Of a stretch of DNA of 64,000 nt, positions 12,454 to 49,260 are shown piece by piece. Made by a program: the position numbers and the translations under genes. Every line of letters starts with the position of its first letter. The stretch's first letter is position 1. The notes under the pieces are model-generated. The model searched no databases. It was given only the letters and a program-made list of their open reading frames with translations, and was not told the DNA's origin. Where the stretch lies: IMG/VR virus record IMGVR_UViG_3300009508_000011, positions 62,001 through 126,000 of that record; one strand, written 5' to 3'.

Positions 12454-14586
12454 ATCTTTTAAGAAGTCCGACGGTAACTTGGAGTTATATTGATTCTTCA
12501 TGAATATACCCATAGACTCCAATACTAGAATATACGGTTCTAACAGAGTGGCACAAACCTTACGGATGTCCTTTGCTAGTAACAGTTCTTCTGGTATACC
12601 AACTTGACTAACAATCTCTATAGGGAGGACTGCAATCTTGTAGTCCTTCTTATTTTGACCGGTTAACCATTGTTCCATACGGTACGCAATATCTTTATCT
12701 TCAATTTTACTTAACCATAACTTAACAGCTGTGGCATTAGGTAAGTCTAAAGATAACTTAACTCCGATGTATGGTGGTGGTGGAGCTTTCCCATATTTAG
12801 GTGCGAATACATAATCCCACATTTCGTAGTGTATGTAAGGAGAACTTTCAGGATTCTTATAAGATTCCTTATCCTTAACAGCAGCGAACTGTAGGTACTC
12901 TGTCTTACCAGTAACCAATGATGTAGTAATTTCATTTTCTACCGCTACAGCTTCTTCTAGGAGCTTCTGTAGTGATAATGTCTTACCAGCCATCACTTCA
13001 TCCATAATCCCCTCAGTAAACTTGTTGAAACGTTTCATGATGTGACTTGGAATCTTAGAGTTCTTAAGTGATACACCTTTATACTCGGGTTCTAACTCAT
13101 CGTAAGCGTTACCTTCACATGCACTTATATAACTAAAGTAATGTTTGGCCTTGGTGGTTAAAGATAACACAGGGAAGAAGAATTCGTTCTTCATTTCCAA
13201 TTTACTAATGTGTTCAGGTACAACACCCATACCGGCAGATAACTGAGCCAATAGATGTACTGTAGTTTGCGATGTAAGATAAACCATTACCGCACCTACT
13301 GAATTAGATACGTCATCGAAACCTAACTCGCCACCATTATACCACTTAACCCAATCTTGTACTGTAAAGATAGTAGAGTCAGTATCGGATACTATTACTG
13401 TCTTACGGATAGACTGTAGGAAGTATGCAACTGATGGTGGTGGATTATCCGTACACCAGAATGAGTTAATCAAAAGAGAGAACTTTTCTAATGTCTCATA
13501 TGTACGTTTAACCTGTGCGCCTAATAAGGCGTATTTATGCGGTGCATCCTTTTCTAAGTCCCACCAAGTAGAACCTTTTAATTCTTCAGCACAAACAATA
13601 CCAATCAATGCTGTAACATCAGCATCCATCTTTTCAATCCATTCTTTAGGATTATCTACAGGTTCAGTAGCCTTAACAGCAAGAGGTGTAATTAGACTAC
13701 GTACTACTTCAGGATTGTATTCGGTTAGATGATACAAATCTTGAGTGTATAAATAAGCAGCACATTGAATTGGTGTTAAGCCTTTAATGTAGTCAGCTAT
13801 GCGTTGAAATCTTTCAGGTGAACGCCAGTATTGGTCAGTAGAACGAGCTACAGCTTTAGTGACTTCATCAGGAGTTGGGTAATGTAGATTGTACGCAGAC
13901 ATAGCAGCTTCAATCTTTTCATAGTTACTAGACTGCACTATGGATACGATGTTATTAATAGCGATGTCAGCATTACGATAATGTCTATTACCCATTAGGT
14001 ATCGTTCGGTGTTAGCATTTGAATATGATGTAGCTGAACGACAGGTAGACGTTAAGGTTGGGTGAGCTGATTTAAGGTATAAAGAATTATGCTCACTTAA
14101 GTGTGCACCTGATATAGAGTTGTTTTTAATTTTGAACGTTGACTGTAGTACGTGCTTAATAGCAGCAGACTCATGGTCACCATTCGCTTTATCTTTTTGT
14201 CCAGCTTTCTTTACCACCTTACGCTTAGCAACGTTACCATCGATGTATTCAGAAAGTATTGAACGTTGTTCATGTGGATTGACATAATTGGTTAACGTTG
14301 GTGCCATTAGATAATTATTATCTTCAATGTCACTTAGGAACTGACTGAACGGGATAGATGCTTTAATGCGTCCTGCCTTTTGGTCACGGTGTAATATTCT
14401 AGTTGATGGGTCATCTAATTCAAATGTACCGCCTTTACCAGTTACTTTCTCAACAAAAGCTAATGCATCTTCTAACGGGATGTCCTCAACTGTTGCAATG
14501 TAATGTGCAGCATCGTTTGTTGCAGCTTTTAAAATATTCAAGTCTCTGCCGTAGTCTTCAGCAGGTTTTACGAAAGGAGAAGTCAT
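12430..14586 (-). CDS. Family B DNA polymerase, polymerase-domain subunit (phiKZ gp50-like)
   Basis: IVSDTDSTIF (PolB region I), KIKNNSISG (region III KxxxNS), HPTLTSTCR, KAKHY. Confidence 0.9.
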   Translation of the reverse strand: MTSPFVKPAEDYGRDLNILKAATNDAAHYIATVEDIPLEDALAFVEKVTGKGGTFELDDPSTRILHRDQKAGRIKASIPFSQFLSDIEDNNYLMAPTLTNYVNPHEQRSILSEYIDGNVAKRKVVKKAGQKDKANGDHESAAIKHVLQSTFKIKNNSISGAHLSEHNSLYLKSAHPTLTSTCRSATSYSNANTERYLMGNRHYRNADIAINNIVSIVQSSNYEKIEAAMSAYNLHYPTPDEVTKAVARSTDQYWRSPERFQRIADYIKGLTPIQCAAYLYTQDLYHLTEYNPEVVRSLITPLAVKATEPVDNPKEWIEKMDADVTALIGIVCAEELKGSTWWDLEKDAPHKYALLGAQVKRTYETLEKFSLLINSFWCTDNPPPSVAYFLQSIRKTVIVSDTDSTIFTVQDWVKWYNGGELGFDDVSNSVGAVMVYLTSQTTVHLLAQLSAGMGVVPEHISKLEMKNEFFFPVLSLTTKAKHYFSYISACEGNAYDELEPEYKGVSLKNSKIPSHIMKRFNKFTEGIMDEVMAGKTLSLQKLLEEAVAVENEITTSLVTGKTEYLQFAAVKDKESYKNPESSPYIHYEMWDYVFAPKYGKAPPPPYIGVKLSLDLPNATAVKLWLSKIEDKDIAYRMEQWLTGQNKKDYKIAVLPIEIVSQVGIPEELLLAKDIRKVCATLLEPYILVLESMGIFMKNQYNSKLPSDFLKDLPFLTQV

Positions 14587-14649
14587 CTCTAGTTCCTTTG
14601 GTTATTTACCACTATACCAAAGTGCCTGTCAGTATTTTTTATATTTAAC

Positions 14650-14676
14650 AAAAAAATAAAGGGGTCACGTGACCCC
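14650..14676 (-). terminator. Intrinsic terminator
   Basis: GGGGTC/GACCCC stem plus U-tract. Confidence 0.8.
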
Positions 14677-14682
14677 AATACT

Positions 14683-15105
14683 TTAATAGAAATAATGACG
14701 CATTCTACAACGATACCAAACATCAAACATGTCTGAGTCTTTACGAGTTTCCTTAGGACATATAGCTTCCATAATACGTCTACGCATTTCATCAGCCCCT
14801 AATTTCTTCAACTCATCTTCTACCGTACCTTCATTATCGTGAATGATAACTTCCGACCAAACTAAAGCAGAGGCCATATCGTCATCACTTTCTATTGCGT
14901 AATAATGGTCAAAGTTGGATTGGTTTGTTTCAACATTACCGTCCTTAATACGATAACGCATACGGGCAAAGCCCCATACAGTTACTAATCGCCCTGGATG
15001 GTCTTTACTCATTTCTATAGCCTTTCTAAGAACATCGCCCTCAGTAACAAAGACATCTAAGTCATTTGCTGGGTGACCACCAAGACTTACTTGTATATTC
15101 CACAT
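14683..15105 (-). CDS. Hypothetical protein (140 aa)
   Basis: ORF with RBS in operon. Confidence 0.65.
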   Translation of the reverse strand: MWNIQVSLGGHPANDLDVFVTEGDVLRKAIEMSKDHPGRLVTVWGFARMRYRIKDGNVETNQSNFDHYYAIESDDDMASALVWSEVIIHDNEGTVEDELKKLGADEMRRRIMEAICPKETRKDSDMFDVWYRCRMRHYFY

Positions 15106-15108
15106 TAC

Positions 15109-15381
15109 TTAATACTCCCTGTTAATGTATAAGTAGGTGCCGTGTGCACCGGCTGTTATTTTAGGGTATGTCACACCTTTTGCTAAATAAGTAGTTTCTC
15201 TACATACGGTACATGCATGTGGGGAAACCTTGACGCCTTCTTTAAATACCGTACCTAGGGCAATCTGATGTACTAGGTTACCATTGTTACACTTAGGACA
15301 TTTAGCATTCTCTACAGAGGCATGTATCGGTTCAGATATCACTTCTGCTGGTTGTTCGGGATAATTTATTTCACTATCCAT
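15109..15381 (-). CDS. Small Zn-ribbon protein
   Basis: CPKC...PHACTVC. Similar to the N-terminal domain of the DHFR at 45464-46351. Confidence 0.65.
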   Translation of the reverse strand: MDSEINYPEQPAEVISEPIHASVENAKCPKCNNGNLVHQIALGTVFKEGVKVSPHACTVCRETTYLAKGVTYPKITAGAHGTYLYINREY

Positions 15382-15434
15382 TTTTCGTCTCCTTTTATTT
15401 AAACGACATAAAGGTGAGGAATTGACCCCACCGT

Positions 15435-15665
15435 TTATAACCTTTTACTCTCGGCAACTGCCATCGACAATAATCTATCTAACTCATCAGTTAACTGAAC
15501 ACGATAATTACATTTAAGATGCATAAAGGTATCTATGATAACAGGACGCACTATTTTAACCATAGCGTAGTCATCAAACTTACTTAGAGTTATCGATATG
15601 TTCGGATACTGCTTAGAGACGTATCTCTTTGTAGTCGTATACGAATACACATCGAACTTATCCAT
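15435..15665 (-). CDS. Hypothetical protein (76 aa)
   Basis: Packed ORF. Confidence 0.55.
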   Translation of the reverse strand: MDKFDVYSYTTTKRYVSKQYPNISITLSKFDDYAMVKIVRPVIIDTFMHLKCNYRVQLTDELDRLLSMAVAESKRL

Positions 15666-15667
15666 GT

Positions 15668-16081
15668 CTATACCATTTTAGCTTCTAATAATGACCAACC
15701 GCCAGCAGCAAGATGGTCTTTCAAACGTACTAACTCAGTAGAACTAATGTTACCAATCATTACTTGCGCAGTGCTGGAATTACGTTTTTCTAGAGTTGTC
15801 AGATTTATCCAAGGTACACCTACCGCAGTATAACGACCGTTAGGAAGTTTAACCTTTAGGTAGAAGTAAGCAAATGGGTCATCTGGACAAGTACCAGGAG
15901 ATAACAGTGGGAAGATGTTACGATGTAATGAATGCGGGTCTATTAAAGACTTCGCTGTATCTGCATCTACCATTGCCACAGCTTGTGCGTTTTCGAACTT
16001 TGTGGGTATGACAGCCTTAACATTTTCAAACACGCTAAAGCTGATTACATCCCCAAGTTTAATACCGGTAAATATTTCCAT
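15668..16081 (-). CDS. Conserved Chimalliviridae small beta-barrel protein (phiKZ gp49-like region)
   Basis: GDVISFSV...DPHSLHRNIFP.L..G..PDDPFAY.YLKV..PNG....VGVPWI motif is recalled from the core block upstream of the DNA polymerase. Confidence 0.65.
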   Translation of the reverse strand: MEIFTGIKLGDVISFSVFENVKAVIPTKFENAQAVAMVDADTAKSLIDPHSLHRNIFPLLSPGTCPDDPFAYFYLKVKLPNGRYTAVGVPWINLTTLEKRNSSTAQVMIGNISSTELVRLKDHLAAGGWSLLEAKMV

Positions 16082-37674: not shown

Positions 37675-37854
37675 CTATTTCTTCTTACGTTGATTTTTCT
37701 TTCTAGCCTTTGCTTGGGCTTTACGCTTCTTACGACTAGCCGGTGTAGAACCAGTAGAACGAACATATTCACTTCTACGTGATTGTGAATTATAAGCATT
37801 GCTTGCAGCTAGACCTTCTGCCATTGCTAACATTAAACCTACATCTTTATTCAT
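37675..37854 (-). CDS. Small protein with a highly basic C-terminus (59 aa), absent from the ORF track
   Basis: Hand translation: MNKDVGLMLAMAEGLAASNAYNSQSRRSEYVRSTGSTPASRKKRKAQAKARKKNQRKKK. GGAG RBS; fills the gap exactly. Confidence 0.65.
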   Translation of the reverse strand: MNKDVGLMLAMAEGLAASNAYNSQSRRSEYVRSTGSTPASRKKRKAQAKARKKNQRKKK

Positions 37855-38980
37855 TTGGTTCTCCCATTATATCTTTAACTGTATCGCCTTCTTTAACTTC
37901 AATGACATTAGGTGCATCTGGCCCAGTATCCGCAAAGAAGAAATTAGGTTGTGTGAAACCACGACCAATATCCGGCTGTACCTCTTCAGGTAGATTATCT
38001 TGAAAAGGACCAACATCAATGTGGATAAATGCTTTAGTGTTGCCCCTAATTGATATATTCTGTGGCTCAGGTATGTAGGTAGGGAAATACCTAGTCAATA
38101 ACTCTTCATCGGATAGTTGGTTTTCCTTTTCAATTACGAGTTTAGCCTTTGCCGATTCACTAGAGAATAGTTCATGTGCACGTTCCATAGTGGTTATGTC
38201 ATCATTAATCAATTGTCTAGTTTCAGGGTCGAACAGTACAGGCTTAACATCTTTCCAACTTTCTCTTGTGGATTCTTCACCAGCAAACATTGAAGAGTTT
38301 CTACGAGCACGATACTCATCAGACTCTTCCTTAGTTTCTCCACCAGCACGCCAGTTATCTTTAACATCATCATAATCACACAGACGCACTGCAATGACAT
38401 CATATTCAGAATGACAACCGTTCTCATTAGAGAACTTATCAGCATTCGGATAGCACATCTTTTCGATGGTTCCATCTTTCAACATGATATCATAAGCATC
38501 TTTAAAACGCCACGAGTTATACGCAACCCACACACCAAAGTCTTCTGGTCTATGTGTCCAATGGGTTAAGTCTTCCTTACCGCGAGGAGACCAGTCTATA
38601 CCTAACTCAGTTTGCTCACCACGTTTAATTGGTGGTACAAATGGTTTATGTACATACTCTTCTTCGACATTCGGTTTACTAGGTTTAGATTCAGGTGACT
38701 TAACCTTGGTAATTTTACCAATTAAAGCAGATAACCTTTGGTAATCATCAACGGTAACGATACCATCATAGTTATCACCAGCTATGGTCTTGACCTTTAA
38801 TCTGGCTGACCATTTACTATAAGTACCGCAAGACACACATACACAGTGATTACCTGGGATACTTACACATTCGTTAACTCCCTGAACGGTAACGCCCTTT
38901 TTAGTATTGATAATGTGTGGTGATTTACAGGAAGAACATACGTAAGATATTTTACCGCCTTTACTAAGCATTGTCTCCAC
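37847..38980 (-). CDS. Hypothetical protein with an N-terminal Zn finger
   Basis: CSSC...CVSC at the N-terminus. Confidence 0.65.
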   Translation of the reverse strand: METMLSKGGKISYVCSSCKSPHIINTKKGVTVQGVNECVSIPGNHCVCVSCGTYSKWSARLKVKTIAGDNYDGIVTVDDYQRLSALIGKITKVKSPESKPSKPNVEEEYVHKPFVPPIKRGEQTELGIDWSPRGKEDLTHWTHRPEDFGVWVAYNSWRFKDAYDIMLKDGTIEKMCYPNADKFSNENGCHSEYDVIAVRLCDYDDVKDNWRAGGETKEESDEYRARRNSSMFAGEESTRESWKDVKPVLFDPETRQLINDDITTMERAHELFSSESAKAKLVIEKENQLSDEELLTRYFPTYIPEPQNISIRGNTKAFIHIDVGPFQDNLPEEVQPDIGRGFTQPNFFFADTGPDAPNVIEVKEGDTVKDIMGEPNE

Positions 38981-39566
38981 TCCCTGACCATTGGTTTATA
39001 AAATCGGTTTCGGAATCAGGGGCACTTAATGAGGATTCGATTTTGTCCCACTGCTTAGGGTAATCCACCAAAGCCACTACGTTGAAATGGCCACCGTAGG
39101 TAGATATTTTGGATAAAGCCGAACGCTTATCCTTAGACTCTACCAATACAACCCTTACCTTACCATCCTGACGCATACTAGAGATAAGACTCTGACATTT
39201 AAGATGACTGAAGTCTTCGAAGATAACAACATCATACCCATCAACATCTGGTAGTTCACGCTCATGTACTATTTCAAGTCCATGACATCCAGTACGGGCA
39301 GAGCTATTTTCACGACCCATGTCCCTAATTCTCTTATCTCTAGTTACCAGTAACACACGTTGTTTAACAACTTTGTTTAAGAAATCCATAGCGATATGTG
39401 TAGCAGCCGTAAGTCCTGTTTGTCTAGGCGTTACCACTATTACGTTACCACCATTGACAATGGCATTAACTGCCATGTACTGCATCTTACTAGGTAACTT
39501 ATCGATATCGAACACTGTCTTAATTCTTTTATTACCTACGAATTCGTCAGTTTGATAATAAGGCAT
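38964..39566 (-). CDS. Terminase-ATPase-like P-loop protein with a degenerate Walker A
   Basis: VIVVTPRQTGLT (compare PRQLGKS in the true terminase), VVIFEDF (Walker B-like), VVLVES, and DFINQW. Confidence 0.5.
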   Translation of the reverse strand: MPYYQTDEFVGNKRIKTVFDIDKLPSKMQYMAVNAIVNGGNVIVVTPRQTGLTAATHIAMDFLNKVVKQRVLLVTRDKRIRDMGRENSSARTGCHGLEIVHERELPDVDGYDVVIFEDFSHLKCQSLISSMRQDGKVRVVLVESKDKRSALSKISTYGGHFNVVALVDYPKQWDKIESSLSAPDSETDFINQWSGSGDNA

Positions 39567-39728
39567 TGTCGGGTTCCTTCTTTTATTTTAATAACATACA
39601 GCAAAGCCAATCATTAACATTAGCGATACTAAGAATACTCCAGCTATCTGTGCAGGCACGCACCCAGCTTTAGCATCTACAAAAATTCTACGTGTTCCAT
39701 TAAATAAAGAATACATGTAATATTACTC

Positions 39729-40280
39729 CTACCACTTCTGTCCAGCAACGTACATAGCCTGATTGACTATGGTATCCTGTTGTTGGTCGGTATCGTGATT
39801 TATAAATTGTACATAAGGAGTCAGTGCTTGACTATAGTCTCCAGCAAATACTATTTCTCTAGTCTTTACCGAATAGTGTATTTCCCTAAGGGAATAATAA
39901 GGGATATTGCAGAACACTTCATTGAGTAACAGCTCTACCCCATACCACACCTTGTTAACTATATCCTCTACAACCTCACCGGTCAAAAAAGATACAGCCT
40001 TATACTGCACATAACTCCAACCATAGAAATCGTCTCCTACGTTACCCATCGCATCGCGAATTAACATGGAACGTCTAAGACACATTTCTAGTAAAGCTAC
40101 CATAACCTCATCTTCAGTACGGTTGACTGTAATGTGATTACTTAATAAATTCGGCAGAAAGTAAAGCGTCTCAATGACAACTCTCTTGCCATCGGACGCC
40201 TTTGATATTTCTTCCATCGAACCTATTGCTAGTTTCATGTTAGGGTCACTTATCTTGACCCTACAGTTTCTTACTCTCAT
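39729..40280 (-). CDS. Hypothetical protein (183 aa)
   Basis: ORF in operon. Confidence 0.6.
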   Translation of the reverse strand: MRVRNCRVKISDPNMKLAIGSMEEISKASDGKRVVIETLYFLPNLLSNHITVNRTEDEVMVALLEMCLRRSMLIRDAMGNVGDDFYGWSYVQYKAVSFLTGEVVEDIVNKVWYGVELLLNEVFCNIPYYSLREIHYSVKTREIVFAGDYSQALTPYVQFINHDTDQQQDTIVNQAMYVAGQKW

Positions 40281-40294
40281 AGGTCCCCTAGATA

Positions 40295-41014
40295 CTACGG
40301 GTTATGGTTGGCCTGTAATACAGAGCGTTGAACAAACTTCATTGCTTCTTCTAGAGGCATTGATTCATATTCTTCAGTACTACTCAAATCGGAAGAGTAT
40401 GTCCACCCATCTAAAGCCAAACCAAGTTCAGTGTACTGAACAGCGCCAGTATTCTTATCTGGTTTAGAAGTAGGTATTAGAATAGATGCACCGTTAAGGG
40501 AAGGTTCAGCCCAAGGAAGTTCTGTAAAGTCCTTACGAACAAATACTTTCTTCTGTTGGAATAGCACAAACTCAACTGACTTCTTGTGGTCCCAGCTAGC
40601 AGATGCTTTTGTAATATCAGGCATTTGATAATCGGTAAAGAATTCATAGTTGGTACTAGTCGTCAATGACAACTTAAACACACGTTCGAATACGGGCATA
40701 CCTTGGATTATGTTACCTAGCATGTAACTAACATTTGCGGGTAAGGCTAACTCTTCACCTACTGGACGTAAATCCATGATGTCTTTTAACTCTACTTCCA
40801 CAACCCACATGGTACTGGTTCTATCCGGATGTTGTCCTGGTATATTGACAACTTCATCAAGATAACCAGTTAATACTGTTTTAGAACCGAACGGGTCTTC
40901 TATTCTACACTGCTCTCCTTCGTTACGTTTAAGTAACTCAGCAAAGGCTTTAGTTGTTACGCGGTCAAAGTTAAATAAAACCTTGTCCCCGTTGACTTCG
41001 TAATGGAATGACAT
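40295..41014 (-). CDS. Hypothetical protein (239 aa)
   Basis: ORF with AAGGAG RBS. Confidence 0.65.
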   Translation of the reverse strand: MSFHYEVNGDKVLFNFDRVTTKAFAELLKRNEGEQCRIEDPFGSKTVLTGYLDEVVNIPGQHPDRTSTMWVVEVELKDIMDLRPVGEELALPANVSYMLGNIIQGMPVFERVFKLSLTTSTNYEFFTDYQMPDITKASASWDHKKSVEFVLFQQKKVFVRKDFTELPWAEPSLNGASILIPTSKPDKNTGAVQYTELGLALDGWTYSSDLSSTEEYESMPLEEAMKFVQRSVLQANHNP

Positions 41015-41034: not shown

Positions 41035-42006
41035 TTATTTTTGTACTACACCGACCACCGTATCATTTTCAGTAACGATTAATCGAGTAACTCTATTCGC
41101 TTCCATGATTTCCAAAGCCTCACCAAAGCGAGAACTTTTATCCACCGTTTTAGGGTGGGCCGTCATGAAATCAAATACTTCTGTACTAATGGGTTTACCA
41201 ACATTAGCCTGTAGACAGCGACGTAAGTCACCATCCGTGATGATACCTTCCAATCTATGGCGGTTACCAACCAGAGCCATGCCTAGTCTACCCCTACTAA
41301 TGTGCCACATGACATCAGCGAGTTCCATGTCCTTTGTAACAAAGGGCAAGTCTTCTGAGCGCATAACGTCTTCAACGCGACACAATAGTTTCTTACCAAG
41401 AGACCCACCGGGATGAAATCTTGCGAAGTCTTCCGGTTTAAAATCACGAGCATTCAATAGGGCTACCGTAATAGCGTCACCAAGGGCCATAGCAGCCGTT
41501 GTAGAGCTAGTTGGTGCCAATTGTAAAGGACAGGCCTCTGTAGTAACACCTGCTCTTAAACTGACTGTAGAGGCTTTGGCTAAAGTATTGTCGTGGTTCT
41601 TAGTAATTGAAATGATAACGTTACCATTATCTTCCAAGAAAGAAAGTAACTTAAGTACTTCCTCAGTCTCGCCAGAATTACTCAAGGCGAGAAATACGTC
41701 GTTGGGTTGCACCATACCTAAGTCACCATGAAAGGCTTCTCCGGGATGCATGAAGAACGATGGTGTTCCAGTAGATGCTAAACTAGCAGCTATCTTTTTA
41801 CCAACTATACCAGACTTACCCATACCACAAACAATTACACGGCCGTTTGTTTGTAGTATTTTACTAATAGCGGTAACGAAACTAACGGAGTCTTCACGTA
41901 GATTATCCGCTAATTCATTTAGGCCTTCTATCTCATTATAGATAGCATCTAAGCCATGTTTAACTGACTTAGTTAAATTACCACCCACTACTACTGGATT
42001 TATCAT
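41035..42006 (-). CDS. kdsD: Arabinose-5-phosphate isomerase (KdsD/KpsF/GutQ family; SIS + 2 CBS)
   Basis: GRVIVCGMGKSGIVGKKIAASLASTGTPSFFMHPGEAFHGDLG, LSNSGET, APTSSTT, FARFHPGGSLG, GIITDGDLRR. Confidence 0.95.
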   Translation of the reverse strand: MINPVVVGGNLTKSVKHGLDAIYNEIEGLNELADNLREDSVSFVTAISKILQTNGRVIVCGMGKSGIVGKKIAASLASTGTPSFFMHPGEAFHGDLGMVQPNDVFLALSNSGETEEVLKLLSFLEDNGNVIISITKNHDNTLAKASTVSLRAGVTTEACPLQLAPTSSTTAAMALGDAITVALLNARDFKPEDFARFHPGGSLGKKLLCRVEDVMRSEDLPFVTKDMELADVMWHISRGRLGMALVGNRHRLEGIITDGDLRRCLQANVGKPISTEVFDFMTAHPKTVDKSSRFGEALEIMEANRVTRLIVTENDTVVGVVQK

Positions 42007-42803
42007 TGGTCTAGCCTCATTCGTTTAACGGTCGCTTCGTAGTCAGCTTGTGTATCTACACCATGCTTAGGTTCTATCAGCGCCGTCATAGCTTTTATAG
42101 TCATTCCGTTTTCGAGTGCTCTTAGCTGTTCTAGTCCCTCAGTCTGTTCAAGTACTGATGGTGGTAACTTACTAAATTTCCTCAGGGTTTTTACGGTGTA
42201 CCCATACATACCGACATGTCTGTAATATTTAAAATCTTCTACGGTGTTCCTCACGTAGGGGGCAGAGGCCCTAGTAAATAATAGTGCATGGTCTTTTATA
42301 CCAGTTACTACTTTAACAACATTAACATTATTTAAATCTGAAATATCACTTACCTCAGTCTTTAAAGTAACTATGTCGGCATTACTATACTTAGTAGCTA
42401 TAGCTAACTGCTTTATTAACATAGGGTCTATTTCAGGTTCGTCACCCTGAACATTCAACACTACGGTATCGTCAGATAGTCTTAATTTATCACAAGCCTC
42501 TAATAACCTATCGGTTCCAGAGTTATGAAATGGACTAGTTAGTATAGTAGGAACTCCGTGTTTGGATAGTGCCTTGGTTATAGATTTATGGTCTACTGCA
42601 ACCATAACCTTACCTTTACCTATTCCAGCTTTCTTACAAGCATTATACACATGCCACACAAGTGGCTTACCATTAATAGGTAATAGTACCTTACCCGGTA
42701 ATCTGGTAGAACTTATTCTGGCTGGGATTATAACCACCACACCAGAACTATCTTTCTTGAACCATTTAAACTTACCGAGTATAGCATTAAAAATCTTTCT
42801 CAT
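42003..42803 (-). CDS. kdsB: CMP-Kdo synthetase (3-deoxy-manno-octulosonate cytidylyltransferase, KdsB/KpsU)
   Basis: IIPARISSTRLPGKVL, SGTDRL, NVQGDEP, RHVGMYGY, LEQTEGLEQLRALENG, GVDT..D. Confidence 0.95.
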   Translation of the reverse strand: MRKIFNAILGKFKWFKKDSSGVVVIIPARISSTRLPGKVLLPINGKPLVWHVYNACKKAGIGKGKVMVAVDHKSITKALSKHGVPTILTSPFHNSGTDRLLEACDKLRLSDDTVVLNVQGDEPEIDPMLIKQLAIATKYSNADIVTLKTEVSDISDLNNVNVVKVVTGIKDHALLFTRASAPYVRNTVEDFKYYRHVGMYGYTVKTLRKFSKLPPSVLEQTEGLEQLRALENGMTIKAMTALIEPKHGVDTQADYEATVKRMRLDQ

Positions 42804-42989
42804 TTTAAATCCCCAGCAATTTTGACATAGGTTAAGGGTAGATAATATTTAAAAACGGCATAAGTAGCAGTCTTAGTGACTGCGGACATTTATGAGAAAA
42901 CTAGGGGAGCGGCCTCCCCATCATAGTCCGAGGGTGAAACTTGGAAGGAAACAACCTCTTTTAACGTTTCATGAAATTAGGAGACAACG

Positions 42990-43124
42990 ATGAAGGAATC
43001 AAGTCTACCTATAATAATAGTAACGTTGTGTATTTTTTATTCGGTTTATTTACTTGGGCAAAAAAAAAGAAAGGGGACCAGCCCCCCTTTCTTTTACTCT
43101 TACTCTGAAACGGGAGTAGCTTAA
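42990..43124 (+). CDS. Possible 44-aa single-pass membrane peptide
   Basis: AGGAG RBS at 42979. MKESSLPIIIVTLCIFYSVYLLGQKKRKG... overlaps a promoter motif and terminator, so it may be spurious. Confidence 0.35.
   Translation: MKESSLPIIIVTLCIFYSVYLLGQKKRKGTSPPFFYSYSETGVA
43014..43038 (-). promoter_or_regulatory. Middle-type promoter with no ORF before the next terminator
   Basis: AAAAAATACACAACGTTACTATTAT. Confidence 0.5.
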
Positions 43125-43134
43125 GCTCCCTATA

Positions 43135-43159
43135 ATAATAACGGTACTGTGTAATAAAA
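43135..43159 (-). promoter_or_regulatory. Middle-type promoter variant with no ORF before the next terminator
   Basis: TTTTATTACACAGTACCGTTATTAT. Confidence 0.45.
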
Positions 43160-45463: not shown

Positions 45464-46351
45464 TCAATAAGTCTTCGATAACTTACCTTGGATGCTAAAG
45501 TTCCAACGGTCGCGAATAATGTGTTCTTCTAGAGAACCTTTTATCTTGTTGGATAACCAGATGTTAAATACCACCGGCTTACCTTTATCGTCGCAATCTT
45601 TAACCATGTGTGTATCTAGGTTATAGTAATTGTCAGCATTAAGAATAGGACCGAATGTATCTGTTGGGTAACTACCGTAGATTATGGTCTCGTAAATTAC
45701 ATCAGCCATTGGTAACCATTGTTGATAACAATAACCGCCGCCAATAACAATTAGGTCGGTATCAGTGTGTTCTTCCAACAACGTAGGTACGTCTGGATAA
45801 TAGAAATCGTCAGTACCCTCAATTGGAGTCTTAACGCTTACGTTAGTGGTTAGTACTGCAAACTTACGGTCAGGTAAAGAAGGTAACCCTTCGTAGGTAT
45901 GTCTACCCACAACTAACAAAGCATCAGGGTTATGTGTAGTTACACCCTTAAACCATTTAAGGTCAGTGGGGTAGTCACGTCCCCATGGTAAGTCACCTTT
46001 ATGCCCAATGCCATGGTTGTATGTTCTAGCCCATATTAAGGCAATGACACCTGAGTGTCCATAGTGGTCACGTAGTCCAGCACGACTAGCATCGATGTTT
46101 GCATTTTGATAAAAGATATTACCCATATCACCCGGTAGGTAAACCTTGTGACCACAACTATTACACACATGTGGGAAGTTTGATTCTTCTGGAGTCTCGC
46201 CCATTTGAATCTCACCTTCTGGGTCTGTTCTATAAGAACCACCGTCACAGTTAGTACACATTACTACATTTACTTGAGCCTTCATTGGTACAAGTACTGT
46301 TTTTACATTATCCGGATTAAGTACCGGTATTTCTTTTTGTTCTTCAGTCAC
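45464..46351 (-). CDS. folA: Dihydrofolate reductase with a fused N-terminal Zn-ribbon domain
   Basis: IALIWA....GIGHKGDLPW....DLKWFKGVT, LVVGRHTYEGLP, LPDRK, VIGGG..Y. N-terminal CTNC...CNSC. Confidence 0.85.
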   Translation of the reverse strand: MTEEQKEIPVLNPDNVKTVLVPMKAQVNVVMCTNCDGGSYRTDPEGEIQMGETPEESNFPHVCNSCGHKVYLPGDMGNIFYQNANIDASRAGLRDHYGHSGVIALIWARTYNHGIGHKGDLPWGRDYPTDLKWFKGVTTHNPDALLVVGRHTYEGLPSLPDRKFAVLTTNVSVKTPIEGTDDFYYPDVPTLLEEHTDTDLIVIGGGYCYQQWLPMADVIYETIIYGSYPTDTFGPILNADNYYNLDTHMVKDCDDKGKPVVFNIWLSNKIKGSLEEHIIRDRWNFSIQGKLSKTY

Positions 46352-46362
46352 TTTAATGACTC

Positions 46363-47292
46363 CTATACGCTAAACGGGTATTTGATTGGGTCTTGCGGTA
46401 CATAGTTCTCAACCTTGAAATCGTTTGGCGATAACCAGGTTTCTACGTCTTCAAGAGTATTTAAATTATCAGGTAAAATCAACCTAGGTATCTCAGTGCT
46501 AGGTTCACGCTTCATGTGTTCCTTAAACAATTCTAACTGGTCTTCATACACATGGGCATTAACTATCTTGTGGAAAGCTTTAGCTGGTGTATGTCCTGTT
46601 ATCTTAGCCATGACTGCTAATAATGTAAATACCTGAACTTGATTATAGTTCAGACCTAATGGTACATCGCAAGAACGTTGCGTGGCATGTAGATACAGTT
46701 TACCGTTAACTAATGAGAATTGGTACCCGAACATACAAGGACGTAGGCAACCCATATGTTCTTCACCAGGGTTCCACATCATTAAGATTTCACCACGGTC
46801 ATCAATACCTTTCTTAAGGTTATTGTAAACTTTACGTAGTTGGTCAATTGAATCGTTTTTGACATAGCCAGTTTTATCTTGGAATATCTCAGGTATTCGC
46901 CAGTCTCTTAATTGTGGACCATAACAACGACCCATAAATTTAGGTGCTGGGTAATCAAACGTTTGTGTACCGTGACGTTTGTGCTGATGTGCCTGAAGAC
47001 GAAATGGACTATGTAACCACACTGGTGCAGTTGAGTTAGCATTCCATGACTTAGTACCCAAAGCTTCAAATTTCTCAGCGTCGTCCCAACCACGGAGGTA
47101 TCCAATTAGTTCAGCAATGGCACCTACCCAATTACTATCTCTAGTAGTTGGTAATGGGAATTCACCTTTACCCACATCATACGTCAAATTAGCGTCTATT
47201 AGAACAAGACAGTTCTTACCAGTTCTCTCATTAAAAACTATCTCGCCTTCGTCTAGGATTTTTCTACCTAGTTCAATATATTGCTTAGTCAT
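46363..47292 (-). CDS. thyA: Thymidylate synthase ThyA (Vibrio/Pasteurellaceae-type)
   Basis: LRPCM (catalytic Cys), QRSCDVPLGLNYN, HKIVNAHVYEDQ, C-terminal YPFSV. Confidence 0.95.
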   Translation of the reverse strand: MTKQYIELGRKILDEGEIVFNERTGKNCLVLIDANLTYDVGKGEFPLPTTRDSNWVGAIAELIGYLRGWDDAEKFEALGTKSWNANSTAPVWLHSPFRLQAHQHKRHGTQTFDYPAPKFMGRCYGPQLRDWRIPEIFQDKTGYVKNDSIDQLRKVYNNLKKGIDDRGEILMMWNPGEEHMGCLRPCMFGYQFSLVNGKLYLHATQRSCDVPLGLNYNQVQVFTLLAVMAKITGHTPAKAFHKIVNAHVYEDQLELFKEHMKREPSTEIPRLILPDNLNTLEDVETWLSPNDFKVENYVPQDPIKYPFSV

Positions 47293-47305
47293 CTAGTTAC
47301 CTTAC

Positions 47306-47701
47306 CTAACGTCTTGTTACAAAAAAACCAGCAGCCATACCAATCACGATATAGAGCGGTAAATCATCAAAGAATGCCATTTGTTCTTCCATTGGCAATT
47401 CAGATATGTAGTTAATGCCATATACACCTAAGGCACCAAGTACTAAAATAATTACTATTAAGAGACTGTTAAAACCAAGTCCGTACCTATCAGATACACG
47501 ACGAGTGGGTTTACCATCTTTATTAGTTGTCCAATTGTCGCCCTTACGATGACGGTCCGTAGGTATTGGCGCACAGGATGGCCATACCGTTGAGCTATCC
47601 ATACCAGATATAAATGTAGTGTTAGTGAATTTGGACACTTGTTCAGTATCTATCTCATTCCACTTGGTTATCTTTTCAGCATTGTTATTCTGATTGTTCA
47701 T
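47306..47701 (-). CDS. Membrane protein (2 C-terminal TM)
   Basis: Two hydrophobic segments in the C-terminal half. Confidence 0.6.
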   Translation of the reverse strand: MNNQNNNAEKITKWNEIDTEQVSKFTNTTFISGMDSSTVWPSCAPIPTDRHRKGDNWTTNKDGKPTRRVSDRYGLGFNSLLIVIILVLGALGVYGINYISELPMEEQMAFFDDLPLYIVIGMAAGFFVTRR

Positions 47702-48779
47702 TGGTTGCTTCCCCAGTCCGTTGATGAACCAGCTCTATATGGTCATTCAACTCTACGTCATAGTACCCATTGTCTACTAGGTACGTTAATTTACGAGCCT
47801 TGTATTCAGACCCATTTACGATAATACTATCAGATGGCAATTCTTCCATATGTTCAAAGTCAACATCGTTTAATGTTGTTCCTGTACACATACCAAGATA
47901 GATGACCACTATACTATCTATAGTTACCTTTAGTGGGTTACTACCACGGTAGAATGTATCCGTCCCATCACCAAACTCAGCTTCAATAGTAATGTAAAAA
48001 CTATTTACAGATTCTGTTTCTTTAACATATACTAACCTGCGAGCTTTATCCTCAACGGAACTAGTAAGTAAGGAGGCGAAGGCATCTTTACCGTTTTTAC
48101 TATCTGCCCTAGGTTGCAATATACTTAATCCGGCACCATGAGATGCTATGCATGATGGACAAGTACCGCAACCATAGATAACTCCACCAATTTTAGTAGT
48201 CTGTTCACAGAACGACACATAATCGATAATTGGTTTCATTCTATTTGATTCGGTGTATCCATGAATCCATTCCGCAACAGTTGCCTTACTGGTCTTTGTG
48301 AGTGGAAATATTAATTCAGGTAACTTAGCCTTGTCCTTTATATTCCACCCCATTGACTTCCATTGTTTCTTTAGATTGGGAATCATCATGATGTTATCAT
48401 CAGATACGGCACCTATAGCTACGTAGTCTGTATCCATAGGAGTTAATAGAGACGACAGGTAAAGCCACAGTTGTTTCTGTGACCATCTAAAATTATTGGG
48501 CCACGCTAAGAAACCATCTATACTAGGAAACTTAAATGTTTGAAACTTAATCTTGTCGTATAAATCTGAATCTCGTATGGCAGTCTTTATTAGATGTCTG
48601 CTATATTTCTCATGATTAGGGTTGGGCATGTTTTCAGCCTGTATACTAAGTGCAGTTACCTCAGCGCCAGCATCCGCCATCGCCAGTAACAGACCAGTTG
48701 AATCCAATCCACCTGACCAAGGTATAACTACCTTCTTACCCTTAAACTTCTTAAGGTTGGGCATTTTATCAAACATCAC
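47685..48779 (-). CDS. QueC-like PP-loop ATP pyrophosphatase with a C-terminal extension
   Basis: VVIPWSGGLDST PP-loop, VAIGAVSDD, FPL...SK, and the Zn site SFC...GCGTCPSC. Confidence 0.7.
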   Translation of the reverse strand: MMFDKMPNLKKFKGKKVVIPWSGGLDSTGLLLAMADAGAEVTALSIQAENMPNPNHEKYSRHLIKTAIRDSDLYDKIKFQTFKFPSIDGFLAWPNNFRWSQKQLWLYLSSLLTPMDTDYVAIGAVSDDNIMMIPNLKKQWKSMGWNIKDKAKLPELIFPLTKTSKATVAEWIHGYTESNRMKPIIDYVSFCEQTTKIGGVIYGCGTCPSCIASHGAGLSILQPRADSKNGKDAFASLLTSSVEDKARRLVYVKETESVNSFYITIEAEFGDGTDTFYRGSNPLKVTIDSIVVIYLGMCTGTTLNDVDFEHMEELPSDSIIVNGSEYKARKLTYLVDNGYYDVELNDHIELVHQRTGEATNEQSE

Positions 48780-49260
48780 TATTACCTACAAATTGACGAC
48801 AAGGTATTTCCTTATCTATTAAAAACTTCTTACCATCATGTTTGGTGTAATCGTTATCATCTGGTAAGCTATCTGGACTACTTAGGAAATCATTTAGATA
48901 CCAGACTTCCTTAATACCAAGAAGATATAAACTTTTAGCACATTCGATACACGGAGCATGGGTTAGGAATACTATACCACCAGTTGCAACTATTCCAGTC
49001 CTAGATAGTTTATCCAGTGAATTACGTTCTGCATGGATTACCTCTGGTCTAGTCTTACCTGCTAATGTAGGATGGTCTAAATCATATTCACATTTATTGG
49101 AAGAACCTGGAGGCATACCGTTCCAACCTACTGAGATTAAACCATTGGTTGTGACCAATACACTACCAACCTTTCTCTTTTCAGCAGCGGACTCCTGAGA
49201 GCACCTAACGGCCATGTCCATGTACAATTGAAAGTACTTGGACTTAAGTGGGTCTATCAT
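48769..49260 (-). CDS. dCMP deaminase (ComEB/Dcd cytidine-deaminase family)
   Basis: KVGSVLV, GWNGMPPG, HAERN, THAPCIECAK. Confidence 0.9.
   Translation of the reverse strand: MIDPLKSKYFQLYMDMAVRCSQESAAEKRKVGSVLVTTNGLISVGWNGMPPGSSNKCEYDLDHPTLAGKTRPEVIHAERNSLDKLSRTGIVATGGIVFLTHAPCIECAKSLYLLGIKEVWYLNDFLSSPDSLPDDNDYTKHDGKKFLIDKEIPCRQFVGNSDV

What the first reader, a model, noticed from the sequence alone, without database searches (positions are those of the whole stretch)
41035..42863. kdsB-kdsD pair as a translationally coupled, recently acquired cassette
Seen: ATGA 4-nt overlap; both genes are near full-length with intact catalytic motifs; an upstream terminator and a truncated early-like motif (TTTTTAAATATTATC, 42841-42856). 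No kdsA or kdsC in this window. Established: the kpsF+kpsU pairing without kdsA is the capsule-locus configuration. Inference: captured from a capsule locus and boosting CMP-Kdo flux via host KdsA/KdsC.
Basis: partly seen in the sequence, partly recalled or inferred. Interest (0 to 1): 0.6.

Follow-up and report, generated by a model that had tools for sequence, protein, structure and literature searches.

The report
Old Kdo-sugar gene pair in jumbo phage
A marine phiKZ-like, nucleus-forming jumbo phage carries intact genes for the first and last steps of making the bacterial surface sugar Kdo; its lineage took them long ago, as a pair, from a bacterial polysaccharide locus, and they probably top up the infected cell's own Kdo pathway.

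Summary
kdsB (window 42803-42003, minus strand) and a full-length kdsD/kpsF (42006-41035) overlap by ATGA. Both pass curated family cut-offs and keep their catalytic motifs. A hairpin and a shortened promoter-like motif lie upstream.

The window is part of a 206-kb phiKZ-like nucleus-forming phage (chimallin, PhuZ, phiKZ capsid protein, split RNA polymerases). No kdsA, kdsC, Kdo transferase or other glycosyltransferase family is detectable in the whole genome.

"Recently acquired" is wrong:
- The pair sits in the same syntenic slot in at least seven other phage contigs, six of them 126-223 kb, at 49-76% protein identity.
- Synonymous sites are saturated between clade members, and dN/dS is about 0.1.
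- GC content and codon use are typical of the genome.

"Captured from a capsule-type locus" is largely right. The closest named bacterial homologues lie in kdsA-kdsB-kpsF modules of Vibrio and Pseudoalteromonas polysaccharide loci, in the same order and also overlapping. Trees place both phage proteins with these copies. A housekeeping origin is rejected for KdsD (AU p = 0.0004) but not formally for KdsB (p = 0.076).

The best reading is a long-retained auxiliary metabolic pair. It supplies the committed step and the reported rate-limiting step of CMP-Kdo synthesis and relies on host KdsA, KdsC and transferases. What this does for the phage is untested.

The parts
42003..42803 (-). kdsB, CMP-Kdo synthetase (3-deoxy-manno-octulosonate cytidylyltransferase), 266 aa. 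It has a basic/hydrophobic N-terminal extension of about 20 aa that bacterial KdsB lacks. GGGGA lies 6 nt before the ATG.
   Evidence: NF003952 262 bits; TIGR00466 210 bits; E. coli KdsB 3K8D/1VH1, 168 bits; KpsU 1GQ9, 143.5 bits; invariant motifs; dN/dS about 0.09-0.12.
41035..42006 (-). kdsD/kpsF, arabinose-5-phosphate isomerase, 323 aa, with one SIS domain and two CBS domains.
   Evidence: TIGR00393 338 bits; aligned to 2XHZ, 5UQI, 3ETN and to the CBS-domain structures 3FNA/3K2V; phylogeny; dN/dS 0.08-0.14.
42003..42006 (-). ATGA overlap of the kdsB stop and the kdsD start. GAGG at 42018-42015 would serve as the kdsD ribosome-binding site.
   Evidence: Relatives overlap by 1, 8 or 11 nt, and the donor-type bacterial loci by 1 or 26 nt.
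42855..42883 (-). 6-bp hairpin (42883-42867) followed by CTTATGCCGT. This is one copy of a recurrent terminator-like element of this genome.
   Evidence: Of 18 TTATGCCG in the genome, 15 lie outside confident coding sequence (14 intergenic plus one inside a doubtful 83-aa ORF call) and each follows a hairpin. Six sit at convergent gene ends.
42841..42855 (-).
42824..42840 (-). TACCCTTAACCTATGTC, conserved in relatives as TACCCTTAACCTATAGGTC. This candidate phage-polymerase promoter or start site for the kdsB operon starts about 37 nt and ends about 20 nt before the ATG.
   Evidence: alignment A10. The promoter assignment is an inference by analogy with the phiKZ TATG and AAanTTACc motifs (PMC4666361).
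42895..43019 (-). Conserved non-coding unit: TATTATTATAGG, a 5' hairpin, the invariant palindrome TTCATGAA, and a terminator hairpin at 42919-42904. It is present upstream of kdsB in all seven phages compared.
   Evidence: No Rfam match.
43056..43140 (-). Second, upstream copy of the TATTATTATAGG unit, ending in the strong terminator 43095-43065 plus a T run.
37847..41014 (-). Four co-directional ORFs conserved across the clade, directly downstream of kdsD: 239 aa at 40295-41014, 183 aa at 39729-40280, 200 aa at 38964-39566, and 377 aa with an N-terminal Cys4 motif at 37847-38980. They are included as context only; no link to Kdo is shown.
   Evidence: Searches found no family. The 239-aa protein models as an all-beta fold with no convincing PDB match. 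Its family has only 11 clusters, all in this phage clade.
43199..45418 (+). Divergently transcribed block of four tail-fibre-like genes (DUF1353 / tail assembly chaperone, DUF4376, Mtd_N-like, minor-tail-like). It is syntenic with the kdsB slot in all relatives.

Best explanation
Shown:
- The two genes encode a functional-looking arabinose-5-phosphate isomerase (KpsF-type KdsD) and a CMP-Kdo synthetase (KdsB).
- They lie in a marine phiKZ-like, nucleus-forming jumbo phage.
- An ancestor of this phage clade took them as an already adjacent, overlapping kdsB-kpsF pair from a gammaproteobacterial polysaccharide (capsule/EPS-type) kdsA-kdsB-kpsF module.
- The clade has kept them under purifying selection ever since.

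Inferred:
- They are probably transcribed as the head of a minus-strand operon from a phage-polymerase promoter and translated in a coupled way.
- In the infected cell, KdsD would pull ribulose-5-phosphate into arabinose-5-phosphate, the committed step.
- Host KdsA and KdsC would make free Kdo.
- Phage KdsB would activate it to the labile CMP-Kdo, which is reported as the rate-limiting step.
- Host transferases (WaaA and/or KpsS/KpsC-type) would use the product.
- The likely pay-off is either continued LPS or capsule assembly (envelope integrity) during a long infection that shuts down host gene expression, or surface remodelling that masks receptors against superinfection.
For: - Identity and intact motifs.
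- Phage type.
- Pathway completeness: no kdsA, kdsC, WaaA-type or KpsS/C-type transferase in three genomes of the clade that carry terminal repeats. No glycosyltransferase family in any ORF of at least 90 aa in this genome.
- Age: conserved synteny in seven other phage contigs at 49-76% identity. dS is above 1.4 or saturated and dN/dS is 0.08-0.15. GC, GC3 and codon use are ordinary.
- Donor type: V. nitrifigilis and Pseudoalteromonas MMG010 carry kdsA-kdsB-kpsF inside Wzz/Wzx/glycosyltransferase loci; the V. nitrifigilis locus, and a Salinicola kdsA-kpsF locus, also hold a Capsule_synth gene. These are separate from their housekeeping kdsB and kdsD.
- KdsB tree: the phage clade (support 92) is sister (82) to a 99* clade that holds both polysaccharide-locus copies.
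- KdsD tree: the phage clade (100*) lies inside the KpsF-type clade (99*), and the housekeeping grouping is rejected (AU p = 0.0004).
- Flux logic: CMP-Kdo synthetase is described as the rate-limiting step of LPS synthesis and CMP-Kdo as extremely thermolabile (PMC3149649).
Against: - No expression data exist. No RNA run holds the region.
- The host is unknown, so host KdsA/KdsC and a Kdo-containing capsule are assumed.
- For KdsB alone, a housekeeping origin is disfavoured (lnL lower by 29) but not rejected (AU p = 0.076). The sister relation has only 82% SH-aLRT in a quick tree.
- No E. coli KpsU/KpsF reference sequences could be included.
- The benefit to a lytic nucleus-forming phage is conjecture.
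- The four conserved ORFans downstream could hide an unrecognised transferase.
- In one relative (L018), further sugar-nucleotide enzymes flank the block, hinting at a more autonomous glycan module.
Confidence: 0.6

Rival explanations
1. Phage-autonomous glycosylation. CMP-Kdo made with the pair would be consumed by an unrecognised phage transferase, for example one of the clade-specific ORFs directly downstream. The target would be a phage structure: tail fibres, capsid, nuclear shell or DNA.
For: The block kdsB-kdsD plus four ORFans is co-directional, tightly spaced and conserved in all relatives. It abuts tail-fibre-like genes. In L018 an epimerase, a UDP-glucose dehydrogenase and an epimerase/dehydratase flank the same block. 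Other phage lineages place an SIS isomerase and a kdsB-like gene within larger sugar clusters that include a GT4-like gene.
Against: No glycosyltransferase family occurs anywhere in the genome. The 239-aa neighbour models confidently (pLDDT 86) as an all-beta protein without a Rossmann-type transferase fold or any convincing PDB match. The other ORFans have no family, PDB-profile or defence-library match, and the one of them sent to the Atlas (the 377-aa protein) gave no usable lead. Without kdsA the phage still depends on the host for Kdo itself.
Confidence: 0.12
2. DNA hypermodification of the RB69/DLP3 type. The isomerase would supply arabinose-5-phosphate for an activated pentose that is attached to modified cytosine in phage DNA.
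For: 274 phage records, mostly T4-like, carry an arabinose-5-phosphate isomerase homologue. In RB69/DLP3 such an isomerase feeds arabinosylation of 5-hydroxycytosine made by a ThyA homologue (PMC13326640). Here a ThyA homologue lies 3.5 kb away.
Against: The ThyA homologue keeps QRSCD (Asp169, not the diagnostic Asn) and Asn177. It sits next to DHFR and dCMP deaminase, as expected for an ordinary dTMP cycle. The T4-like isomerases match only the SIS part of the query, residues up to about 207, whereas this one has both CBS domains. No kinase/uridylyltransferase, phosphatase or DNA glycosyltransferase was found. The partner enzyme is a canonical KdsB with all KdsB-invariant residues.
Confidence: 0.03
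3. One reading: a recently captured cassette.
For: The gene order and overlap match bacterial kdsB-kpsF modules. The slot upstream of kdsB is variable among relatives: one to three small paralogous genes, an epimerase, or nothing.
Against: The best bacterial identity is only 45-47% for KdsB and up to about 61% for KdsD. The phage clade is monophyletic with long stem branches (0.31 and 0.89). The position is syntenic in all clade members, dS is saturated, and composition is typical of the genome.
Confidence: 0.03
4. Decaying or functionally shifted genes: the pair no longer makes CMP-Kdo.
For: The phage lacks the two middle steps and any transferase. KdsB carries a phage-specific N-terminal extension.
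Against: Both reading frames are full-length in all relatives. dN/dS is about 0.1. Every residue invariant among bona fide bacterial KdsB is retained. The KdsD motifs that align with the 2XHZ structure are all kept. Scores exceed the curated cut-offs.
Confidence: 0.05

Closest known systems
Bacterial polysaccharide-locus Kdo modules (kdsA-kdsB-kpsF in Vibrio nitrifigilis and Pseudoalteromonas sp. MMG010; E. coli group 2 capsule kpsF/kpsU)
   Same: The same two enzymes, with kdsB followed by kpsF and overlapping reading frames. Both phage proteins group phylogenetically with these copies rather than with the housekeeping ones.
   Different: The phage lacks kdsA and kdsC and lacks the export, Wzx/Wzz, glycosyltransferase and KpsS/C-type genes of those loci. 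Identity is only 45-54%. Phage KdsB has an extra N-terminal peptide of about 20 aa, and phage KdsD is about 10 aa longer.
Virus-encoded Kdo or LPS auxiliary genes (cyanomyovirus S-SCSM2R kdsA+kdsB, PMC12801897; the Kdo genes of the giant virus CroV, recalled from memory)
   Same: A virus carries part of the CMP-Kdo pathway, presumed to alter the host cell surface.
   Different: S-SCSM2R carries kdsA+kdsB together with 13 glycosyltransferases, and its KdsB is only 30% identical. Here the set is kdsD+kdsB with no transferase, in a nucleus-forming phiKZ-like phage. No such genes were reported in the papers searched on this group.
Arabinosyl-5-hydroxycytosine DNA modification clusters of T4-like phages (RB69, DLP3; PMC13326640)
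   Same: A phage-encoded arabinose-5-phosphate isomerase draws on ribulose-5-phosphate.
   Different: Those systems combine a short isomerase (matching only the SIS part here), a D169N ThyA homologue, a kinase/uridylyltransferase, a phosphatase and DNA glycosyltransferases. None of these features is present here.
Housekeeping KdsD and KdsB of LPS synthesis
   Same: The same reactions and the same catalytic motifs.
   Different: Housekeeping copies from the donor-like genomes score much higher on the family models (KdsB 314-386 bits against 210 for the phage; KdsD 360-380 bits against 338). They fall in separate clades.

Membership tests
KdsB / CMP-Kdo synthetase (TIGR00466, NF003952) | Score above the curated family cut-off over the full length | tested here: met
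   NF003952 262 bits (cut-off 193) and TIGR00466 210 bits (cut-off 155.2), covering residues 22-263. Also found in a six-frame search of the genome.
KdsB / CMP-Kdo synthetase (TIGR00466, NF003952) | Nucleotide-binding loop PARxxSxRxPGK, the two Mg-binding aspartates (in QGDEP and GVDT), and the sugar-site LEQLR motif | tested here: met
   All are invariant columns in alignment A9 and align with E. coli KdsB 3K8D/1VH1. The role of the two aspartates is taken from PMC3149649.
KdsB / CMP-Kdo synthetase (TIGR00466, NF003952) | Catalyses CTP + Kdo -> CMP-Kdo + PPi | not testable with these tools
   Needs an enzyme assay or complementation.
KpsF/GutQ/KdsD arabinose-5-phosphate isomerase (TIGR00393) | Score above the cut-off, with an SIS domain followed by tandem CBS domains | tested here: met
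   TIGR00393 338 bits (cut-off 203.7). Pfam SIS at residues 52-181 and two CBS stretches. The CBS part aligns to 3FNA/3K2V.
KpsF/GutQ/KdsD arabinose-5-phosphate isomerase (TIGR00393) | Active-site Lys59, His88, Glu111, Glu152 and His193 (E. coli KdsD numbering; the residue list is recalled from the literature, not checked in a paper here) | tested here: met
   The aligned positions GMGKSG, AFHGD, GETEE, TEACP and FHPGG are all conserved.
Capsule/polysaccharide-locus type (KpsF/KpsU-like) as opposed to the housekeeping LPS type | Branches with copies that sit in polysaccharide loci, not with housekeeping copies of the same genomes | tested here: met
   This applies to KdsD, which lies inside the 99* KpsF-type clade. 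The grouping of phage with housekeeping copies is rejected at AU p = 0.0004.
Capsule/polysaccharide-locus type (KpsF/KpsU-like) as opposed to the housekeeping LPS type | The same test for KdsB | tested here: inconclusive
   The ML tree puts the phage clade sister (82) to the 99* polysaccharide-locus clade. Forcing it with Vibrio/Pseudoalteromonas housekeeping copies costs 29 lnL units, but AU p = 0.076.
Capsule/polysaccharide-locus type (KpsF/KpsU-like) as opposed to the housekeeping LPS type | Physically linked to transferase, export or kdsA genes | tested here: not met
   No kdsA, kdsC, Capsule_synth, WaaA-type or other glycosyltransferase is found in this phage.
Arabinosyl-5-hydroxycytosine DNA modification system (RB69/DLP3) | ThyA homologue with Asp169->Asn, plus a kinase/uridylyltransferase and DNA glycosyltransferases | tested here: not met
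   ThyA reads QRSCD with Asn177 kept (criterion). None of the partner families is present in the genome.
Chimalliviridae-like nucleus-forming jumbo phage (the genome that holds the pair) | Chimallin, PhuZ tubulin, phiKZ-type capsid protein, split multisubunit RNA polymerases | tested here: met
   PF25677 192.9 bits at window 9140-11035. PhiKZ_MCP 606 bits. TubZ_C_2/Tubulin, RNA polymerase Rpb1/Rpb2 domains, divDNApol and phiKZ_IP are also present.

The most novel reading that the evidence does not exclude
The conserved block kdsB-kdsD plus the four clade-specific ORFans, next to the tail-fibre-like genes, is a self-contained phage glycosylation module. One ORFan would be a Kdo transferase of an unrecognised fold that decorates a phage structure (tail fibres, capsid or the nuclear shell) with Kdo. 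This would be the first Kdo-glycosylated phage component.
Probability: 0.1. Interest if true: 0.75.

Novelty: new member of a known kind. Interest (0 to 1): 0.35.

Why it matters
Virus-encoded genes for host surface sugars are known, but the papers I could search do not report Kdo-pathway genes in nucleus-forming (phiKZ-like) phages. These phages wall off their DNA yet still depend on the host cytoplasm and envelope.

A clade-wide pair kept under purifying selection, encoding only the committed step and the reported rate-limiting step, is a clean case of a phage taking the likely flux-control points of a pathway and leaving the rest to the host.

It also gives a host clue: a marine Gram-negative organism, plausibly a gammaproteobacterium with a Kdo-containing polysaccharide.

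It offers a simple experimental handle, namely complementation and CMP-Kdo measurements. The result also corrects the "recent cassette" reading, showing that a compact, overlapping bacterial-looking pair in a phage can be old.

Tried and rejected
Searches that gave nothing:
- Megablast of the region against 50,697 phage records found no match. tblastn with KdsB found only six distant records.
- The capsid protein is at most 37% identical to any cultured phage, so no close cultured relative and no host label are available.
- No tRNA genes were found.
I used those as references, not as evidence about the nearest relatives.

The four downstream ORFs:
- No hits in Pfam, NCBIfam, PHROGs or PADLOC. 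Profile searches against PDB sequences also found nothing.
- The Atlas search found nothing usable.
- The AlphaFold model of the 239-aa protein is good (pLDDT 86), but Foldseek and VIA-align gave only generic beta-domain matches with Z of 5.5 or less.
- The model of the 377-aa protein was too poor (pLDDT 53) to search.
- A scan of viral contigs with the 183-aa protein found only the two known relatives.

The upstream non-coding units:
- No Rfam match.
- RNAalifold on two MAFFT alignments predicted no pairs, because the 5' hairpins were misaligned. Folding each sequence alone gives a 5' hairpin in all seven.

Readings considered and rejected:
- TATTATTATAGG is not a genome-wide promoter. It occurs only twice, both times here.
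- Reading hairpin+TTATGCCGT as a late promoter, because it contains the phiKZ TATG, is less likely than a terminator, since six copies lie at convergent gene ends.
- DNA arabinosylation was rejected.

Tools not used or without result:
- No RNA sequencing run holds the region.
- Complex prediction and the large representative-protein search were not needed.
Full report
**What is at the coordinates**

The minus strand holds two ORFs, 42803..42003 (266 aa) and 42006..41035 (323 aa). The junction reads GAC CAA TGA over ATG ATA, so ATGA occupies 42006-42003. A GAGG lies 8 nt upstream of the second start, and a GGGGA 6 nt upstream of the first.

The first protein passes the curated cut-offs of two KdsB models: NF003952 at 262 bits (cut-off 193) and TIGR00466 at 210 bits (cut-off 155). 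The second passes TIGR00393 (KpsF/GutQ family) at 338 bits (cut-off 204) and has one SIS domain and two CBS domains.

Against solved structures, KdsB aligns end to end with E. coli KdsB (168 bits) and less well with the capsule isozyme KpsU (143.5 bits). KdsD aligns with the E. coli KdsD SIS domain and with isolated CBS-pair structures.

All columns invariant among 15 phage and bacterial KdsB sequences are kept in the window protein. These include PARxxSxRLPGK, SGTDR, QGDEP, LEQLRAL and GVDT. The KdsD positions that I recall as catalytic are also kept. The sequence observation is therefore confirmed.

The ATGA overlap itself is unremarkable. Six of 185 same-strand neighbour pairs in this genome overlap by 4 nt. 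Relatives use 1-, 8- or 11-nt overlaps at the same junction.

**What genome this is**

The window is bases 62001-126000 of a 206,117-bp virus record with a 123-bp terminal repeat. I called 231 ORFs and scanned every ORF of 90 aa or more against Pfam: four batches, earlier single-protein scans of the ORFs near the pair, and one extra scan for the 2136-aa protein. Each batch list was shorter than the 25-family display limit, so the lists are complete.

The result is a phiKZ-like nucleus-forming jumbo phage:
- phiKZ major capsid protein (606 bits);
- chimallin at window 9140-11035 (193 bits);
- PhuZ-type tubulin;
- RNA polymerase Rpb1 and Rpb2 domains;
- phiKZ internal head and vertex proteins.

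The capsid protein is at most 37% identical to any cultured phage, so this is an uncultured lineage. The same or near-identical sequence occurs in marine, seawater, aquaculture, sponge and sand metagenomes from 14 studies.

**What the phage does not have**

- There is no kdsA (PF00793) or kdsC (TIGR01670) in the whole genome, and no kdsA in two related genomes that also carry terminal repeats.
- There is no WaaA-type or KpsS/KpsC-type Kdo transferase in the three genomes.
- No glycosyltransferase family and no other sugar-nucleotide enzyme appears in the genome-wide scan.

CheckV rates the records 76-79% complete despite their terminal repeats, so absence is strong but not absolute.

**Not a recent acquisition**

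Protein searches found a small set of close homologues on contigs of 126-223 kb. I fetched seven such loci plus one short near-identical contig.

All seven show the same order:
1. dCMP deaminase, ThyA and DHFR (not every one of these in every locus);
2. three or four tail-fibre-like genes on the opposite strand;
3. a variable slot;
4. kdsB and kdsD;
5. conserved ORFs of about 239, 183, 200 and 370 aa;
6. a RadC/JAB protein, a protein of about 490 aa and a non-specific endonuclease (these last three are missing from the most divergent locus, L018).

Identities to the window proteins are 49-65% for KdsB and 61-76% for KdsD, in line with the neighbouring genes.

Between clade members, synonymous sites are saturated (dS 1.4 to above 3) and dN/dS is 0.08-0.15. 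Against the near-identical contig, kdsD gives dS 0.06 and dN/dS 0.11.

kdsB (GC 0.385, GC3 0.311) and kdsD (GC 0.425, GC3 0.343) lie within the genome's spread (0.402 +/- 0.018 and 0.339 +/- 0.034). Their codon-use scores do too.

The family of the 239-aa neighbour has only 11 clusters among 5.8 billion proteins, on the same contigs as the 13 phage-type KdsD clusters. The pair therefore appears universal in the known clade.

**Where the pair came from**

The best named bacterial hits to KdsB are from Vibrio nitrifigilis and Pseudoalteromonas sp. MMG010. Both lie in polysaccharide loci in the order kdsA, kdsB, kpsF (310-313 aa), with kdsB and kpsF overlapping by 1 and 26 nt. Wzz/Wzc, Wzx, glycosyltransferases, an initiating transferase and, in V. 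nitrifigilis, a Capsule_synth (KpsS/C-type) gene surround them. A Salinicola KpsF sits in a similar locus with kdsA and a KdsC-like hydrolase.

The V. nitrifigilis and Pseudoalteromonas genomes also hold separate housekeeping copies that score much higher on the family models: KdsB 314-386 bits against 191-229, and KdsD 372-380 bits against 327-336. The phage proteins score 210 and 338 bits.

In a 95-row KdsB tree:
- the 12 phage rows form one group (SH-aLRT 92);
- that group is sister (82) to a 99* group of 13 rows containing both polysaccharide-locus copies;
- the housekeeping copies of the same species lie across the tree.

In a 77-row KdsD tree:
- the 15 phage rows form one group (100*);
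- it lies inside a 99* KpsF-type group, within a subgroup (93) that holds the V. nitrifigilis and Pseudoalteromonas polysaccharide-locus copies;
- the four housekeeping KdsD form their own group (95*).

Forcing the phage with housekeeping KdsD is rejected (lnL lower by 43.6, AU p = 0.0004). The equivalent test for KdsB costs 29 lnL units but is not significant (p = 0.076).

Together with the shared gene order and overlap, the simplest history is a single capture of an adjacent kdsB-kpsF pair from such a module, without the kdsA just upstream. The bacterial diversity surrounding the phage clade argues for transfer from bacterium to phage.

**Upstream signals**

The 395-nt gap between kdsB and the divergent DUF1353 gene contains several elements.

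(i) Hairpin plus CTTATGCCGT (42883-42855). TTATGCCG occurs 18 times in the genome. Fifteen copies lie outside confident coding sequence (14 intergenic, one inside a doubtful 83-aa ORF call), whereas non-coding sequence is 7.6% of the genome. Each of these follows a GC-rich hairpin, and six lie at convergent gene ends. I read this as a phage-specific terminator-like element. It does contain the TATG of phiKZ late promoters (PMC4666361), so that reading is a caveat.

(ii) TTTTTAAATATTATC (42855-42841). It is a shortened form of a recurrent AT-rich + TATATTA[CT] motif that lies 12-52 nt upstream of about ten genes.

(iii) TACCCTTAACCTATGTC (42840-42824). In relatives this is conserved as TACCCTTAACCTATAGGTC. 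It is a candidate start region for the operon.

(iv) Two copies of a unit beginning AAAAATACACA-N-TATTATTATAGG. Each is followed by a 5' hairpin and a terminator. The proximal unit is present in all seven phages compared and carries the invariant palindrome TTCATGAA. Its 5' hairpin forms in every phage with a different stem sequence.

Promoter classes are assigned only by analogy with phiKZ and are untested. Relatives carry one to three paralogous small genes, or an epimerase, in this gap; one (L015) has nothing there. This genome has none of these genes.

**Function**

The shown part is identity, integrity, selection and history. The inferred part is as follows.

KdsD diverts ribulose-5-phosphate to arabinose-5-phosphate. 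Host KdsA and KdsC make Kdo. Phage KdsB makes CMP-Kdo, and host transferases use it.

The CMP-Kdo synthetase step is described as rate-limiting for LPS synthesis, and its product as extremely thermolabile (PMC3149649). The phage thus holds the entry step and the bottleneck step, a familiar pattern for auxiliary metabolic genes.

Plausible pay-offs are envelope maintenance during a long, host-shut-off infection, or surface remodelling against superinfection. Papers on marine jumbo phages and cyanophages propose the latter for LPS genes.

**Rivals**

An autonomous glycosylation module is not excluded. The reasons are the conserved ORFan block, the neighbouring tail-fibre genes and the extra sugar enzymes in L018. 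However, no transferase is recognisable, and the best-modelled ORFan is an all-beta protein with no convincing match.

DNA arabinosylation as in RB69/DLP3 is unlikely:
- the ThyA homologue keeps Asp169 and Asn177 and sits with DHFR and dCMP deaminase;
- the isomerase has CBS domains, whereas the T4-like isomerases match only the SIS part of the query;
- the partner enzymes are absent.

**Comparison with known systems, and novelty**

Kdo genes in viruses are known: kdsA+kdsB with many glycosyltransferases in cyanophage S-SCSM2R, and CroV from memory. IMG/VR holds 364 KdsB-like stretches. Of the best 80 loci, six have kdsA and six have a short isomerase homologue next to or within about 4 kb upstream of kdsB. 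In L190 that isomerase is SIS-only, abuts kdsB and sits within a larger sugar cluster.

A full-length KpsF following KdsB is seen only in this clade. I found no paper linking Kdo genes with nucleus-forming phages.

I therefore rate it a new member of a known kind, of moderate interest.

**Limits**

- The trees are quick-search trees with SH-aLRT support only.
- E. coli KpsU/KpsF sequences could not be included.
- The host is unknown and there are no expression data.

Noticed in passing
window 42895-43019 and 43056-43140 (minus strand); L121:566-708, L012:8893-9035, L014:8981-9123, L011:9008-9150, L017:9005-9147, L015:8997-9139: Conserved non-coding unit upstream of kdsB in all seven clade phages. 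It consists of AAAAATACACA-N-TATTATTATAGG, a 5' hairpin whose stem sequence differs between phages, the invariant 8-nt palindrome TTCATGAA, and a terminator. This genome has two copies. TATTATTATAGG occurs nowhere else in the 206 kb. It could be a small RNA gene or a regulatory site. There is no Rfam match.
   Followed up: partly
genome-wide; in the window e.g. 19579, 33883, 42863, 49341, 58847 (minus strand): Recurrent element: a GC-rich hairpin directly followed by YTTATGCCGT. Fifteen of 18 TTATGCCG lie outside confident coding sequence, and six sit at convergent gene ends. It looks like a phage-specific terminator signal without a U tract. It contains the TATG core of phiKZ late promoters.
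   Followed up: partly
window 7390, 19548, 31822, 53730 (minus strand), and outside the window at genome 6668, 52544, 56397, 58004, 174967: AT-rich + (A/C)TATATTAT(C/A) motif 12-52 nt upstream of start codons. It resembles the phiKZ early-promoter core as I recall it. Several copies lie about 22-25 nt after a hairpin+TTATGCCGT element.
   Followed up: partly
window 42741-42803 (first ~21 codons of kdsB): Phage KdsB proteins of most clade members carry a basic, hydrophobic N-terminal peptide of about 20 aa that bacterial KdsB and the L018 relative lack. It could be an amphipathic membrane-association or localisation signal.
   Followed up: no
L011:8185-9003, L012:7979-8758, L014:7732-8863, L017:7779-9000, L121:42-437: Relatives hold one to three tandem paralogues of a small protein family (117-141 aa) between the DUF1353 gene and kdsB. 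This genome has no copy anywhere (tblastn). The slot is a variable hot-spot.
   Followed up: partly
L018:8183-9145 and 13872-15961: The most divergent relative (a 126-kb contig) has an NAD-dependent epimerase just upstream of kdsB. It also has a UDP-glucose/GDP-mannose dehydrogenase and an epimerase/dehydratase after the conserved ORFan block, which suggests a larger glycan module in that phage.
   Followed up: no
window 45464-49260 (minus strand): Nucleotide-metabolism block: dCMP deaminase, a 364-aa PP-loop (QueC-like) protein, a ThyA homologue with Met in place of His147 but with Asp169 and Asn177 kept, and a DHFR whose matching domain starts near residue 100.
   Followed up: partly
window 38964-39566 (minus strand): By eye, the 200-aa ORF family shows an 'RQxGLT' motif and a 'VVIVEDF' motif. 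These recall terminase-type Walker A (with the Lys replaced) and Walker B motifs. No family match.
   Followed up: no
L190:7327-8699, L168:7348-8702, L180:18-1372 (other IMG/VR contigs): Unrelated phage lineages place a short isomerase homologue (SIS-only in L190) immediately upstream of a kdsB-like gene, again without kdsA. In L190 the pair lies within a cluster holding a hexapeptide acyltransferase, a methyltransferase, an aminotransferase fragment and a GT4-like gene. The isomerase + cytidylyltransferase pairing seems to have arisen more than once in phages.
   Followed up: partly
protein P0241 (72% identical KdsD): This protein is labelled 'MAG: Thalassobius sp.' / 'Thalassovita sp.' in NCBI but lies on a 208,618-bp contig of this phage clade. 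It is recorded on 140 contigs, including Tara samples. It is probably a phage contig binned into a bacterial MAG, and the clade is widespread.
   Followed up: no
genome 143883-150293 (outside the window): A 2136-aa ORF with a C-terminal M23 peptidase domain, probably a virion-associated lysin or tail protein. The genome also has a Tad2-like (Thoeris anti-defence) domain protein and a Dam methylase.
   Followed up: no
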